64,000 bases of DNA, from assembly GCA_964057225.1 (NCBI GenBank), contig OZ059898.1:7254001-7318000 (forward strand), written 5' to 3'. The stretch is from Auanema rhodensis (Eukaryota > Animalia > Nematoda). How positions within the stretch are numbered: the first letter of the stretch is position 1; each line of letters begins with the position of its first letter. A model generated the notes under the pieces. The model was given only the letters and a program-made list of their open reading frames with translations, did not search any database and was not told the origin of the DNA. The position numbers and the translations under genes are program-made. Positions 25,424 through 30,610 of the stretch are shown here, piece after piece.

Positions 25424-28333
25424 TTATTTAGATGTGAACTTTCTTTCCATATACCCATGAGAACTCTGCAGAGATCTCTTATTACTTTGTAGCCTTTGTT
25501 CCATTGACTGTTCCGAAGCTGCTACTACTTGTGACCTATAGAGAAATAAATGTTACATAAAAAAACAAGCATCAATACCGAATAAAATTAGGTACTTTTC
25601 CTTGCTGTTCTTCCTCTTCTTCTTTTTCTTCCATTGATTTTGTTGCTTTCAAGTTCATATTTCTTGTAGATTCACGCCAATTGACATTTTCCTATAGTAT
25701 TTCAATTGATGATGAATCTTCAAAGCGATCAACACACCTGCATTTCACGTAAACGAGCTTCCTTTTCTTCTTCGGTTAATGGCTTTCGTTTAACAGGAAC
25801 CTGATTTGAATGTTTAATTAGCTGTCTATATTCATTAAAGTTTTACCTTGTTTATAACTGCATCAGGTAACTGTCTGGCAGCTTGGTAAGGGTTCACAGG
25901 GGCCGCTTTATTATCACGTTCTTTTTTTTTTACCTAAACAAATAAATTAGTTAAATATTCACATGCCAACATACTTCAACAAGGCCAAACCCAGCAAATT
26001 TCTTTTTCCTTTCAAATTCCTCCATATCAAAATCTGGCGGCAACGGCACTTCCTTTTCACTATCGGAACTTTCAACTGATTTCTAGAAATTGGGAATAAA
26101 GGCAAAATATAAAAAAAAACTAACTATATTTTTCCTTAAATGTTCTGGAATGTGAGAATCGAATTGACGAGAAGCAGTTCTAAAGTTGGATAAATTTATC
26201 AACTCAAAAGAAACAAGATTAAAAAAATCAATAGAACTAATAAACAAAATTTCAAATAGAACAGAACACCTTTTGGGTTAAACACTAAATCAGGGGATAC
26301 AAATTTCTAAAAAGAAATAAGATACAAAGCTAAATTAACCTTTCAGAAGAAGAACTTCTTTCTCTTTTCCTTTCTGATGATTTTGAACTAAATGAGAATA
26401 GTATTAAAATTATAACAATTCTGAAAAACAACCTTTTCTTTTCAGGAGAAGATGAATATCGTTTTCTTCCGCGTTCCTCGGTTCGATCTCTTCTTCGGGA
26501 GGCAGGAGAAACTGATTTTTTTTTAAAACTATTTTCACCCCTTCGTTTAGGTGACGACGAATCTCTTCTCTTACTCCTATTAGGAGAAGGAGAGGCTGAA
26601 GAATCATGCCTCTTTGTCCTTCTACTTGATCTATTATCAGACTTGGAAGGAGAAACTGACGACTTTCTCTTATTTCGAGGACTATTCCTTCTACCTGACT
26701 GTTTAGGAGAAGGAGAAGCTGAAGAATCATGTCTTTTTGTCATTCGACCTGCTCTATTGCCTGATTTGGAAGGAGAGGTAGATGAGTTCCTCCGTCTTCT
26801 AGGACTATGCTTTCTAGCTGACCGTTTAGGTGAAGGAGACTCTGAGGAATCATGTCTTTTACGGTTTCGATCTACACGATCACTCGACAAATCTCCTTTT
26901 CTGCGAGGACTATTTTTTCTAGCTGATCGCTTAGGAGAAGGAGAAGCTGAAGAATCATGTCTTTTTGTCATTCGACCTGCTCTATTGCCTGATTTGGAAG
27001 GAGAGGTAGATGAGTTCCTCCGTCTTCTAGGACTATGCTTTCTAGCTGACCGTTTAGGTGAAGGAGACTCTGAGGAATCATGTCTTTTACGGTTTCGATC
27101 TACACGGTCACTCGACGGATCTTTTCTTCTGTGAGGACTATTTTTTCTAGCTGATCGCTTAGGAGATGGCGAAACTGAAGAATCATACTGCCTAGATTTG
27201 GAAGGAGATGCAGATGAATCCCTCCGTTTTCTAGGACTATACTTTCTAGCTGATCGTTTAGGAGAAGAAGAAGCTGATGACAAAGGTTCAGATTGCTTTC
27301 GATTTTTCCTCTCCTTTGAACCAGACCTACTTCGTGACGTATGTTTTCTAAACATATGCAGTTCAATTTGTAAAAAAATAAAACAACAATTTACCTTTTG
27401 TAAGCTATGGATCGTTTTTCCTTGTCTCTTCTTGGTGATGGTGAAGATCGTCTCCTGTAAATAAACAGATTTTCATAGAAAATTATATATAACAGACCTC
27501 CTATCTTCTCGAGAATGTTGAGGAGAACGTGGGTGTCGTTTACTTCTTGATGATTTTTCGCATGACTGAGATCTTTTTCGCATTCTAAAAAGCCTTTTCA
27601 AATATAGAAGAGTATATTAAACCTTTCATTAGATTTGTCCATGGATCTAGATCTTTTTCTAACTTTCTGAAATATTAAATTACAACATAAACATTTAACT
27701 CAAACCTTTTCATCATCTGATGAATCTGAACTATCGGTCTTCTTCTTTTTCTAAGTGTTAAACAGTTGGAGTAAGACATAAGAAATTAATTATACCTTTT
27801 TTTCTTTTTTATCTTTTTTTTTCTTTCCCTTTTTTTTTTCCTTTTCGCACATCATTTCCTTAATCATTTTCTGAAGTTTCATCCTAACCAATGGGTTCTC
27901 CATTTGTTCTTTGCGACGAAGCTCCTCTTTCAACTAAAAAAAAAATTTTAAAAAGGAGGAAGAAAGAAAGTATGACAAACATACTCTGACTGCAACAAGG
28001 GGGTCCTCAGTTTTGATAACACTGGTTTGAAGAGTTGTAATTTTAGGTGCATTTGAAGTTTCACTTCGATGGGATGTTCCAAAAAATGAGCCAGTTATAC
28101 TTCTGAATATTCATTGGAAGAATACCTGTTATTAATCAGATGCTCAAAAGCATTCGGCTTCTGTTCAACTACAGCATCTGAATATTTTTCAAAATTTTTG
28201 TCAATCTGAAAGCAAAATTACAAAAATTTTAAAAATGGACAACAACTTTTTTTCCAAGTAAATAATCTTCTCGATTTACTTGAGCTTTCACGCCCTCATA
28301 CATCCATCCTATATCTTTTTCTTTTGCAGCCAT
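25424..28333 (-). CDS. CWC25: Pre-mRNA splicing factor CWC25 (mog-3-like) with an expanded RS-rich region
   Basis: GWMYEG..VNREDYLLGKKIDK; TEDPLVAV; MENPLVRMKL; C-terminal EKEARLREMQENVNWRE..SMEQRLQSNKRSLQ..MERKFTSK*. Confidence 0.82.
26570..27260 (-). repeat. Coding tandem repeat with a 228-bp (76-aa) higher-order unit built from HDSSxSPSPKRS sub-repeats
   Basis: GAAGAATCATGTCTTTTTGTCATTCGACC recurs at 26721 and 26949 (period 228); more degenerate units flank it. Confidence 0.9.
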
Positions 28334-28897
28334 TCTAAAATATGTTAAAATTAAATAATAATATTATATTTATGCATAAACAATAATATCAGAAAAAAAC
28401 AAAAAAATCTTTTTTAAATTATCAACTAATGTTAAGATGAATCAGAGTTTAGCATTGTATAACAAGAATTTAATTCATCATTGATGATGAAGAATCAAAT
28501 GTTTTCTAAATAAAACTTTTTAACTAGTAACTAATATACTTAATTCAGCTGCAATCACTGTTCAAGAGAGAAAATATTAAATTAATTATAGATATGCGTA
28601 AACGATTCTATTCATTATGAGTGTATTAAAATAATAAATAGTAATTTATACTTAATGTTCCTGATTTATAATGCTACCTTTTTCGAATACGATTATATAA
28701 TATTTTTAAAATTATGTACGTGATTGCGTACGCATATATATTACTAATTCTAGGAACACATTTTTTTATAAGAAATACATATTTATAAAGACTAAGAATA
28801 CAATCATTTCAAATTTTAAGTTTTCACATAAATATTTATCACTTTTCCATGAATACCTATAACATTATGAATGGATAGAATGGCATGAACAAAAAAA

Positions 28898-29746
28898 TTA
28901 ATTTTTAAAAGAGTTAATAGCTTGTTCGACTACTACTTCTAAGACACCTTGGTTGTTTAAGTTAACTGTGTCGTCACAACCACCAATGTATTCACCACTA
29001 ATAAAAACCTAAAAAATTATTAGTTCAGTCAACTTATCATAAAAATTACCTTCGGAACGGATCTACTACCATAGCGTTTGATGAACTCTTGCTGGATTTC
29101 TTCACAATCATCTCGTTCATCTAGTTCTATGTATTCGTAGTGAGCATCAGACAATCGAAAAGTTGCTAAAAGTGCCTTTGCCTTTCTAAAAAATTGAAGT
29201 CAAAATATTTAACGAAATTTGTACTCGCCGGCAAAATGGACACCAAGATTTACTGAACATTACAATAGGTTTCGAAGCTATATAAGCATCAATTATTTCT
29301 CCTGGACTGTTTTTTTTTAACGGTATCTTTCCGGTATTAGAAATTGAAGAAGAGGCTTTTTTTTCCTATAAACATTTTTATATCAAAACATTACCATTCG
29401 AGAGAGAAAAATACCTTCATTATTTCAGCTAATTTCTCTGCTCTTTTTTGATCATGTTTTGCTTTAAGCTCCTCCGAAATAAGGTTATGTTCCTCTTGCT
29501 GACGAAGTCTAACCTTTTCCAGATCATTAGAAATTTTAGAGTGTACTGATGTATCATATTTCTTTCTGTTCACCATCTCAGACTCTGCTCTCATAACATT
29601 TAATTTAGGTAGAACAACATTAGTGTACAAAGCATAACCAATACCAGCTGATAAGACCAATAGCCAGCCATAGGTTTCGAAGAAACCCCAAACTAAACAT
29701 ATATTGAAAACTTCTCATAATAGCTAGACTTACTCATTGAAATCAT
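28898..29746 (-). CDS. Selenoprotein S (VIMP)-like TM/coiled-coil N-terminus fused to a dithiol glutaredoxin
   Basis: MISMIWGFFETYGWLLVLSAGIGYALY (TM)..LEKVRLRQQEEHN..KRAEKLAEIMK, spliced in frame to PIVMFSKSWCPFCRKAKALL..IELDERDD..SVPKVFISGEYIGGCDD. Confidence 0.85.
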
Positions 29747-30132
29747 TCTTCAAAAAAAATAAACAGAATAATTCCAAGTTTTGAATTGAATCTGAAAAAA
29801 TCTAACATTTATTATTTCAAGCGAATTAACTGATTTAACAACACATAACAAAAATAGTAATTAAGAAAAGTGAGAATATATCACTTAAATTTAATTAATT
29901 TATGTTTCAGATTCTTAGTAAACGCATCATATTATTAATTACAATGATATCAATATTCTGCTTATACATGGTCAACAGCGCAATATATTAACATATTAAC
30001 AAAATTTTAAAATACGTGATTTAGCGTTTCCGTGAGAGGTTAATACGTGAATATTCAAACTTAGTTTTATATTATATACAAAATTATATACTACTGTTAT
30101 CTTTCATTAGCATATTCATTGATTAAGAACTA

Positions 30133-30610
30133 ATGGATCGTAAGGACGCTAAGAAAAGCAATAAACTTAATTCAAAAAAAGTTGTTCACTCTGAAAAAAT
30201 GTAAGTTTATATAAAAATTGTTTTGATTTAGTTTAGCTTCGTACAGGGTGAAGAAACAAAAAATTAGTAGTTTTGAAAAAGCTAAACAGGTTTATGAGCA
30301 AATTCAAGAACAAAAAAAAAAGGAAAGAGAACAGGTACGAAAATATTTAACCTTTTAAATTCATTATTGATGGACAGAAAAATAAAGATCGAGAGCAAAA
30401 ACAGAAAGCAGTGGAAGAATATAATTCAAGAAAAAAGAAAATGCATAACGTTAGTTTTATTTTTTCTTAGTTTGTTATATTGTTTAACTCCAATTTGTCT
30501 GTTTGTAGGCCATTAGAAAACGCAATAAAAAGGGTCAACCTAATCTCGGAAGTCAAATGGAAGCTATATTAGATAAAATTCAAAACAAATCGAGAAAAAA
30601 TGAATTGTAG
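30133..30610 (+). CDS. CCDC59: CCDC59/TAP26 (Fyv7-like) small basic coiled-coil protein
   Basis: Four exons; the C-terminus KRNKKGQPNLGSQMEAILDKIQ matches the family KKGQPxLxxQMExLLxKI motif. Confidence 0.8.

What the first reader, a model, noticed from the sequence alone, without database searches (positions are those of the whole stretch)
28898..29746. Selenoprotein S-like ER anchor fused to a CPFC glutaredoxin in place of the selenocysteine tail
Seen: a YGW-TM segment and an RLRQQEE-type coiled coil splice in frame into a complete dithiol glutaredoxin (CPFC, SVP, IGGCDD); there is no in-frame TGA. Known: SelS/VIMP is an ER membrane partner of p97/Derlin in ERAD whose redox activity is a penultimate Sec/Cys in a disordered tail, and nematodes have lost nearly all selenoproteins. 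Inference: Sec chemistry was replaced by domain fusion, giving a membrane-tethered glutathione-dependent reductase at the retrotranslocon. A similar fusion may already be annotated in other nematodes; I cannot check.
Basis: partly seen in the sequence, partly recalled or inferred. Interest (0 to 1): 0.7.

Follow-up and report, generated by a model that had tools for sequence, protein, structure and literature searches.

The report
Selenoprotein S anchor fused to glutaredoxin
This roundworm gene really does join the membrane anchor and stalk of selenoprotein S to a complete glutaredoxin enzyme in place of the usual selenium-bearing tail. The same fused gene is kept across many roundworms but seems never to have been described in a paper.

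Summary
A five-exon minus-strand gene (29746..28898, 675 nt, 224 aa, four GT/GC..AG introns of 41-49 nt) has no in-frame TGA.

- **N-terminal part.** Exon 2 alone passes Pfam's Selenoprotein_S cut-off (33.2 vs 29.8 bits). It is 34% identical over 90 aa to a true Sec-type SelS whose gene ends GGG-TGA-GGT-TAA.
- **C-terminal part.** Exons 3-5 encode a class I dithiol glutaredoxin with CPFC, SVP and GGCDD.
- **Conservation.** The same architecture (PF06936+PF00462) occurs in at least 11 named nematode species of clades III, IV and V. The model aligns end to end with them (53% identity to Auanema) and shares their intron positions.
- **Transcript evidence.** A cDNA contig from an unnamed relative, still carrying its SMART oligo, holds the fusion as one uninterrupted ORF. 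It is therefore one gene, anciently fused.
- **Decay in Caenorhabditis.** C. angaria has CPFS and C. briggsae has lost the Grx domain, which probably explains why the fusion went unnoticed. Databases call these proteins 'Glutaredoxin domain-containing protein'. I found no paper describing the fusion.

Inferred only: ER location, cytosol-facing topology and glutathione-dependent reductase activity. p97/Derlin partnership is doubtful, because only 2-3 of the 7 human p97-contact residues are kept.

The scan had not noted this fusion before on other DNA.

The parts
29734..29746 (-). Exon 1: 13 nt, ATG plus four codons and one base (M-I-S-M), donor GTAAGT
   Evidence: The same 13-nt phase-1 first exon is annotated in Auanema, and a 16-nt one in Steinernema and C. 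briggsae. The N-terminus MIS... is shared with Auanema and Heterorhabditis.
29415..29692 (-). Exon 2: the SelS-family module, made of a transmembrane segment and a charged helical stalk
   Evidence: Pfam PF06936 scores 33.2 bits against a cut-off of 29.8, E 6.3e-08, model positions 32-114 of 192. BLASTP gives 34% identity over 90 aa to the Sec-type SelS P0007.
29610..29672 (-). Predicted single transmembrane segment, aa 12-32, opening with the SelS-type YGW motif
   Evidence: Best hydrophobic window, mean Kyte-Doolittle 1.6. G and W are invariant in 15 aligned sequences. Flank charge is -1 on the N side and positive on the C side.
29502..29534 (-). Stretch equivalent to the human VIMP p97-binding motif (human residues 78-88), only partly conserved
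   Evidence: Profile alignment to PDB 5KIU/2Q2F. Contact residues are taken from PMC5725882. The Arg equivalent to human R86 is invariant in nematodes, but the R78, M89, L93 and V97 equivalents are I, Q, H and S.
29366..29414 (-). Intron 2 (49 nt, phase 0) at the boundary between the SelS module and the linker plus Grx
   Evidence: The same position and phase (after nt 291) occur in Auanema, and a phase-0 intron lies at a similar place (after nt 363) in Gnathostoma.
29225..29365 (-). Exon 3: Ser/Lys-rich linker (aa 98-120), the start of the Grx fold, and the active site CPFC (29231-29242)
   Evidence: Under the GC-donor model the exon ends at 29229.
29050..29185 (-). Exon 4: the middle of the Grx domain, including the SVP cis-Pro motif (29053-29061). 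It begins at 29181 with the GT donor or 29185 with the GC donor.
   Evidence: Pfam PF00462 scores 21.5 bits on this exon alone.
28898..29008 (-). Exon 5: the end of the Grx domain with IGGCDD (28970-28987), the C-terminal helices and the TAA stop
   Evidence: The preceding intron (SVPK|VF, phase 0) is at the same place as in Auanema.

Best explanation
One protein-coding gene gives a 224-aa single-pass membrane protein with three parts. The first about 100 residues are the conserved N-terminal module of the selenoprotein S (SelS/VIMP) family: a YGW-type transmembrane anchor followed by a long charged helix. A disordered linker of about 20 residues follows. Then comes a complete class I dithiol glutaredoxin (CPFC), standing where canonical SelS has its disordered Gly/Pro-rich tail with the Cys...Sec redox loop. 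The fusion is old: it is present in nematode clades III, IV and V with shared introns, and it is most simply explained by a single origin. Inferred mechanism: the anchor inserts N-out/C-in, as in SelS. The stalk then holds the Grx domain on the cytosolic face of the ER membrane, where it is recycled by glutathione and reduces or deglutathionylates disulfides on membrane-proximal clients. A folded GSH-dependent thiol-disulfide module would thus do the job that the selenylsulfide loop does in animals with canonical SelS. Shown here: the gene structure, the homology of both halves, conservation of the fusion, and a fused mRNA in a relative. Inferred: ER location, topology, catalytic activity, and any link to CDC-48/p97 or Derlin.
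For: Gene model: four short introns (41-49 nt), none a multiple of 3, one stop only. Exon 2 matches PF06936 above its cut-off. An exhaustive phmmer search of 1.84 billion proteins with exon 2 gave 11 hits: six proteins of 207-241 aa that carry both PF06936 and PF00462, three further SelS-type proteins without a Grx domain (one of them a canonical SelS), and two long proteins (1210 and 2752 aa) that I did not examine further. That canonical SelS ends GGG-TGA-GGT-TAA, which reads Sec-Gly-stop, and aligns to exon 2 at 34% identity with E 3e-16. A profile of the nematode N-termini finds human SelS chains 5KIU and 2Q2F as its top PDB hits (E 0.02). Named fusions occur in Auanema, Mesorhabditis, Haemonchus, Heterorhabditis, Diploscapter (two copies), C. 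angaria, two Steinernema species, Onchocerca, Elaeophora and Gnathostoma. The window model aligns end to end with them at 28-53% identity. All four of the window's intron positions coincide with Auanema's (the CPFC one in phase too if the GC donor is used), and the intron after CPFC is shared with Steinernema and Gnathostoma. Contig L002 starts with the SMART template-switch oligo and carries the 234-aa fusion as one uninterrupted ORF, so it is one mRNA. An AlphaFold model of the Auanema orthologue shows a helix at 13-100, a disordered stretch at 101-116 and a Grx fold at 117-221, with mean pLDDT 84. Foldseek's best matches are zebrafish and human Grx2 and poplar GrxC1, with TM-score 0.85-0.94 on the target. 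No SECIS or other Rfam match lies in 28000-30300. Human SelS is a reductase in vitro through its Cys174-Sec188 loop (PMC13524514).
Against: The Grx Pfam hits on single exons are each just under the cut-off (17.3 and 21.5 vs 22.9 bits), and the joined model was not sent to any search tool. The SelS match covers only a TM plus a charged helix, which is a composition prone to weak spurious hits: UPF0697 and TMEM210 also scored, though below their cut-offs. The p97-contact face is mostly not conserved. In the Grx-domain tree the two Steinernema sequences do not join the other 12 fusion domains, although no well-supported branch forces a second origin. Some orthologues have monothiol or odd active sites (CPFS, CPYS, CPPC), and C. 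briggsae has dropped the Grx domain altogether, so the redox function is dispensable in some lineages.
Confidence: 0.75

Rival explanations
1. The N-terminus is only a generic signal-anchor plus coiled coil that resembles SelS by composition. On this reading the protein is a membrane-anchored glutaredoxin of the secretory pathway, like yeast Grx6/Grx7 or plant GrxC3/C4, with the Grx domain in the lumen.
For: Yeast GRX7 and plant GrxC4 appear among the Grx-domain hits. Other TM plus helix families give weak hits to exon 2. The PDB match to human SelS is weak (E 0.02).
Against: The PF06936 score is above the curated cut-off in the window and in every orthologue tested. The match to a bona fide Sec-SelS runs through the TM (YGW), a KKYD motif and the R..Q.EH motif in register. 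The charge distribution favours a cytosolic C-terminus. The yeast and plant Grx domains sit far from the fusion clade.
Confidence: 0.08
2. It is a mitochondrial Grx2-type glutaredoxin, as UniRef names the Steinernema orthologues, and the N-terminus is a targeting or outer-membrane anchor sequence.
For: UniRef uses the name 'Glutaredoxin-2, mitochondrial' for the Steinernema proteins. The closest solved folds are Grx2.
Against: The N-terminus is a 21-residue hydrophobic segment preceded by an acidic residue and no Arg or Lys, so it is not an amphipathic presequence. It is homologous to the SelS ER anchor. The database name is an automatic transfer from the Grx domain only.
Confidence: 0.07
3. 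The architecture is real, but the Grx domain is not a reductase here. It would serve as a glutathione or Fe-S sensing domain or as a binding module, on its way to being lost as in Caenorhabditis.
For: The active site has decayed to CPFS in C. angaria and CPYS in one unnamed contig. The domain is lost completely in C. briggsae. Haemonchus has CSYC, a motif type known from Fe-S-binding Grx2 (the Fe-S link is my own background knowledge).
Against: In the window every catalytic and GSH-binding motif is intact: Lys before CPFC, both Cys, SVP and GGCDD. Most orthologues keep a dithiol site.
Confidence: 0.08
4. These are two separate genes (a small SelS-like gene and a glutaredoxin gene) wrongly joined by the reader.
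For: Reading through intron 2 gives a stop after 9 codons, so an anchor-only product is conceivable, and Caenorhabditis does have an anchor-only gene.
Against: The gap is only 49 nt, with GT..AG ends, and lies at the same position as an annotated intron in Auanema. Exon 3 has no start codon upstream of the fold. A cDNA contig from a relative carries both halves in one ORF.
Confidence: 0.02

Closest known systems
Selenoprotein S (SELENOS / VIMP; Pfam PF06936)
   Same: It has the N-terminal single transmembrane segment with the YGW motif, followed by a long charged helix. It matches the family profile above the cut-off and is 34% identical to a Sec-type member over 90 aa. A redox-active pair of chalcogen residues sits at the C-terminal end of the same scaffold.
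   Different: It has no Gly/Pro-rich disordered tail, no Cys174...Sec188-Gly loop, no TGA and no SECIS. A folded glutaredoxin takes their place. The p97-contact face is mostly changed. The expected electron donor is glutathione rather than thioredoxin reductase.
Class I dithiol glutaredoxins (Grx1/Grx2, plant GrxC1-C4; Pfam PF00462)
   Same: It has a CPFC active site with the preceding Lys, the SVP cis-Pro motif and GGCDD. The predicted fold of the orthologue superposes on Grx2 and GrxC1 with TM-score 0.85-0.94.
   Different: It is tethered to a membrane through a stalk of about 70 residues and a SelS-type anchor, rather than being soluble.
Yeast Grx6/Grx7 (membrane-anchored glutaredoxins of the early secretory pathway)
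   Same: Both have an N-terminal membrane anchor followed by a Grx domain.
   Different: The yeast proteins are monothiol and face the lumen (my background knowledge). Their anchor is not SelS-like, and their Grx domains are distant from this one in the tree.
Thioredoxin-glutathione reductase (Grx domain fused to a selenoprotein TrxR)
   Same: It is another case where a Grx domain is fused to a selenoprotein-family scaffold. Its Grx domain appears among the structural matches.
   Different: There the Grx is added to a Sec enzyme that keeps its Sec. Here it replaces the Sec-bearing part.

Membership tests
Selenoprotein S family (PF06936) | Match to the family profile at or above the curated cut-off | tested here: met
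   Exon 2 alone scores 33.2 bits against 29.8, E 6.3e-08. Orthologues score 30.7-40.4 bits.
Selenoprotein S family (PF06936) | Single N-terminal transmembrane segment followed by a long helix (coiled-coil region) | tested here: met
   The hydrophobic segment is aa 12-32. The stalk region (aa 34-100) is 45% charged residues. The AlphaFold model of the 53%-identical Auanema orthologue has one helix at 13-100. For the window itself this is shown by alignment only.
Selenoprotein S family (PF06936) | VCP/p97-interacting motif, with contact residues R78, L82, R86, M89, L93, V97 and K88 of human VIMP | tested here: inconclusive
   The window equivalents are I, L, R, Q, H, S and R. The core A/V-R-x-R-Q-Q-E is the best conserved stretch in nematodes, but most contact residues differ.
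Selenoprotein S family (PF06936) | Disordered Gly/Pro-rich C-terminal tail with a Cys...Sec (or Cys) redox loop, plus UGA and SECIS | tested here: not met
   The profile match ends at model position 114 of 192. There is no in-frame TGA, no Rfam SECIS hit and no Cys in the linker. It therefore carries the SelS N-terminal module but is not a selenoprotein S in the strict sense.
Class I dithiol glutaredoxin (PF00462) | Profile match | tested here: inconclusive
   Searched exon by exon only: 17.3 and 21.5 bits against a cut-off of 22.9. The joined model was not searched. Colinear orthologues score 31-73 bits.
Class I dithiol glutaredoxin (PF00462) | CxxC active site and glutathione-binding motifs (Lys before the site, T/SVP, GGxDD) | tested here: met
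   SKSWCPFC, SVP and IGGCDD are read directly from the translation.
Class I dithiol glutaredoxin (PF00462) | Thioredoxin/Grx fold | tested here: met
   Shown by proxy. The model of the Auanema orthologue has pLDDT of about 90 over 117-221. Foldseek's top hits are Grx2 and GrxC1 at E 1e-10 with TM-score 0.85-0.94.
Class I dithiol glutaredoxin (PF00462) | GSH-dependent disulfide reductase activity | not testable with these tools
   This needs an enzyme assay.
ERAD p97-Derlin-VIMP complex | Physical binding to CDC-48/p97 and Derlin at the ER membrane | not testable with these tools
   Only partial motif conservation can be stated.

The most novel reading that the evidence does not exclude
The nematode fusion is a natural domain swap. 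A folded, glutathione-recycled glutaredoxin functionally replaces the disordered Cys-Sec redox loop of selenoprotein S on the same ER-membrane scaffold. If so, it is independent evolutionary evidence that the in vivo job of the SelS family is thiol-disulfide reduction at the cytosolic ER face. It would also show that this job does not intrinsically need selenium. It would offer a Sec-free, genetically tractable entry to finding SelS substrates.
Probability: 0.4. Interest if true: 0.7.

Novelty: new variant of a known kind. Interest (0 to 1): 0.55.

Why it matters
Human SELENOS is a strong reductase in vitro, but its in vivo substrates are unknown, and why it needs selenocysteine is posed as an open question in the 2026 interactome paper (PMC13524514). 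A lineage that kept the SelS anchor and stalk but swapped the disordered Sec loop for a textbook glutaredoxin argues, in the manner of a Rosetta-stone fusion, that redox catalysis is the conserved purpose of the scaffold. It also predicts a change of electron donor to glutathione.

The fusion corrects the published view that Caenorhabditis has no SelS homologue (PMC4114682). A Grx-less SelS-like gene exists in C. briggsae and a decayed fusion in C. angaria.

The protein is present in filarial and strongylid parasites (Onchocerca, Haemonchus), where thiol-redox enzymes are studied as drug targets.

Tried and rejected
- **PDB, single sequence.** A search with exon 2 alone gave only a chance hit. 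The profile search was needed.
- **Canonical SelS word search.** A search with the canonical SelS P0007, meant to find named canonical SelS in nematodes, returned only two unnamed proteins. Whether any nematode keeps a canonical SelS stays open.
- **Rfam.** It gave no SECIS on the P0007 contigs at gathering threshold, although the TGA-Gly-stop ending is plain. It gave nothing in the window region either.
- **Literature.** Searches for SelS/SELENOS/VIMP combined with glutaredoxin, nematode and related terms found no description of the fusion.
- **C. elegans glutaredoxins.** GLRX-21 was considered as a possible orthologue and rejected. [quoted passage not shown]
- **Species.** The species of the window could not be named with the tools left. 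By the Grx tree it sits with clade V rhabditids.
- **Joined model.** It was built from window.fa only inside scripts, for counting, alignment and the tree.

Full report
**What is in the sequence**

The region is AT-rich eukaryotic DNA; the window as a whole is 30% G+C. On the minus strand an ATG at 29746 opens a 13-nt exon that ends at a GTAAGT donor. Four more exons follow: 29692-29415, 29365-29225, 29181-29050 and 29008-28898. They are separated by introns of 41, 49, 43 and 41 nt, and none of those lengths is a multiple of three.

The spliced CDS is 675 nt, which is 224 codons plus TAA. It has no internal stop and no in-frame TGA.

| Motif | Residues |
|---|---|
| YGW | aa 12-14, opening a 21-residue hydrophobic segment |
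| RLRQQEE | aa 66-72 |
| CPFC | aa 139-142 |
| SVP | aa 185-187 |
| IGGCDD | aa 196-201 |

The stated ends (28898, 29746) and the stated 29415/29365 junction are exact.

**A detail of the model**

Intron 3 has two in-frame solutions that differ by one residue.
- A GT donor at 29224 must pair with a weak acceptor (tttagaaag|G) and gives R144.
- A GC donor at 29228 pairs with the strong ttttttag|A acceptor and gives K144.

The second solution reproduces the phase-2 intron that Auanema, Steinernema and Gnathostoma have directly after the CPFC/CPPC motif. It also reproduces a Lys that is invariant in nine orthologues. I prefer it, but only reads can decide.

**Is the N-terminus SelS?**

Several results say it is.
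- Exon 2 alone (92 aa) matches Pfam Selenoprotein_S at 33.2 bits against a curated cut-off of 29.8, E 6.3e-08, over model positions 32-114 of 192.
- An exhaustive phmmer search of 1.84 billion representative proteins with exon 2 gave just 11 hits. Six are proteins of 207-241 aa that Pfam scores for both Selenoprotein_S and Glutaredoxin.
- Of the other five, three are SelS-type without a Grx domain: P0007, the 130-aa C. briggsae protein, and an Ancylostoma protein with only a weak SelS match. Two are long proteins (1210 and 2752 aa) that I did not examine further.
- P0007 is a canonical 191-aa SelS (141.8 bits to the family). On its contig the ORF ends GGG-TGA-GGT-TAA, which is the Sec-Gly-stop ending typical of SelS.
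- Exon 2 and P0007 align at 34% identity over 90 residues, E 3e-16 pairwise. The alignment stays in register through the YGW membrane segment, a KKYD motif and the R..Q.EH motif.
- A profile of 15 N-termini finds the human SelS chains 5KIU/5KIW/5KIY and 2Q2F as its best PDB matches, though weakly (E 0.02).

**Is the C-terminus a glutaredoxin?**

By rule I searched exon by exon. Exons 3 and 4 hit PF00462 at 17.3 and 21.5 bits, each just under the 22.9 cut-off because the domain is cut in three. The joined model was not sent to any search or fold tool.

Inside scripts, the spliced translation aligns without rearrangement to 15 full-length orthologues, whose Grx domains score 31-73 bits. The catalytic and glutathione-binding motifs are all intact in the window.

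An AlphaFold model of the closest orthologue (Auanema, 53% identical) shows three parts, with mean pLDDT 84:
- one helix from residue 13 to 100;
- a disordered stretch at 101-116;
- a confident Grx fold at 117-221.

Foldseek places that fold next to zebrafish and human Grx2 and poplar GrxC1, with TM-score 0.85-0.94 on the target.

**One gene or two?**

The evidence points to one gene.
- The gap between the two halves is a 49-nt GT..AG intron. Reading through it stops the frame after nine codons, and exon 3 has no start codon ahead of the fold.
- All four of the window's intron positions coincide with annotated introns of the Auanema gene: after nt 13, after nt 291, at the CPFC site and before VF (in phase at the CPFC site too under the GC-donor model). 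The intron after CPFC is shared with clades III and IV.
- The 1100-nt contig L002, from a public run, begins with the SMART template-switch oligo. It carries a 234-aa SelS+Grx protein as one uninterrupted ORF with untranslated ends, so it is a cDNA of a fused mRNA in a relative.

**Distribution**

Proteins with both domains were found in the following nematodes.

| Clade | Species | Active site noted |
|---|---|---|
| V | Auanema sp. JU1783, Mesorhabditis belari, Heterorhabditis bacteriophora, Diploscapter pachys (two copies) | CPFC |
| V | Haemonchus placei | CSYC |
| V | Caenorhabditis angaria | CPFS |
| IV | Steinernema carpocapsae, S. hermaphroditum | CPFC |
| III | Onchocerca volvulus, Elaeophora elaphi | CPYC |
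| III | Gnathostoma spinigerum | CPPC |

Every named hit with both domains is a nematode.

In C. angaria the site has decayed (CPFS, and GGYEE for GGCDD). In C. briggsae the orthologue is a 130-aa anchor-plus-stalk protein with no Grx on the same strand downstream.

A tree of Grx domains puts 12 of 14 fusion domains together (support 91/82). The window sits inside a well-supported clade V group, in an unresolved cluster with Auanema, C. angaria and Diploscapter. The Steinernema pair is unresolved, and no well-supported branch forces a second origin. A single ancient fusion with later decay in Caenorhabditis is the simplest reading.

Absence from clades I and II was not established, because the searches are not sensitive enough to claim it.

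**What is known**

Databases label these proteins 'Glutaredoxin domain-containing protein', 'hypothetical protein' or 'Glutaredoxin-2, mitochondrial'. The last is an automatic name from the Grx half. Both Pfam domains are already precomputed for them.

I found no paper that describes the fusion.
- The nematode selenoproteome paper states that no homologues of selenoproteins other than those it listed were found in Caenorhabditis, and SelS was not on its list (PMC4114682).

**Mechanism**

*Shown:* a SelS-type anchor and stalk joined to an intact dithiol Grx.

*Inferred:*
- **Topology.** The anchor probably inserts with a short luminal N-terminus and a cytosolic C-terminus, as in SelS. The charge is -1 before and positive after the membrane segment.
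- **Position of the Grx.** The Grx would then sit on a stalk of about 70 residues at the cytosolic ER face, where glutathione and glutathione reductase can recycle it.
- **Parallel with SelS.** Human SelS is a strong reductase in vitro through its Cys174-Sec188 loop, but its substrates are unknown (PMC13524514). The nematode protein has a folded redox module at the same end of the same scaffold.

Seven human residues reduced p97 binding when mutated: the p97-facing R78, L82, R86, M89, L93 and V97, plus K88 at one side of the interface (PMC5725882). The window keeps only the L82, R86 and K88-like positions; the others are I, Q, H and S. The invariant Arg and the surrounding R-x-R-Q-Q-E are still the most conserved stretch in the nematode family. 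Some partner is probably bound there, but it need not be CDC-48.

The causal claim that Sec loss drove the swap is untested. Other agents' notes say this genome still has a Sec-containing selenoprotein K with a SECIS. I did not check that. If it is true, Sec insertion was still available to this lineage.

**Verdict**

This is a real, conserved, nematode-wide variant of the SelS family. It is present in databases under uninformative names, appears to be undescribed in the literature, and was lost from the model Caenorhabditis species. It is of moderate interest as a natural experiment on what SelS does.

Noticed in passing
window 29186-29228 (minus strand): Intron 3 may be a GC-AG intron (donor GCGAGT at 29228, acceptor ttttttag at 29186). 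This choice, and not the GT donor four bases downstream, keeps the intron phase and the invariant Lys of the orthologues.
   Followed up: partly
window 26330-27355 (minus strand): A 341-aa open frame is very rich in Ser, Arg, Pro and Lys, with repeated SPSPKRSARK...SPRR units. It looks like an SR-related protein. It has no Pfam match at E 0.001.
   Followed up: partly
L004 4001-4483 (C. briggsae CP090893.1): Caenorhabditis briggsae has a 130-aa SelS-family protein (anchor and stalk only, PF06936) with no glutaredoxin downstream. It shares the first two intron positions of the fusion genes. A published survey reported no SelS homologue in Caenorhabditis.
   Followed up: partly
L007 154-735: The canonical SelS used as comparator ends GGG-TGA-GGT-TAA (Sec-Gly-stop). 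It has Ser, not Cys, at the place of the human resolving Cys174 (SSGWRP against CSWRP). Its Sec would therefore have no partner in the loop.
   Followed up: no
L001 1072-2964 (minus strand): A second contig carrying the same 234-aa fusion ORF as L002 also holds an uninterrupted 630-aa ORF on the opposite strand, convergent with it. This is probably two transcripts merged through overlapping 3' ends in an unstranded assembly.
   Followed up: no
P0008 / P0021 (Ancylostoma ceylanicum) and P0031 (Steinernema glaseri): The Ancylostoma protein has the SelS-like N-terminus followed by an Arg/Pro/Ala-rich C-terminus with no Pfam Grx match. The S. glaseri protein is 400 aa. Both may be gene-model errors at fusion loci, but I did not test this.
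   Followed up: no
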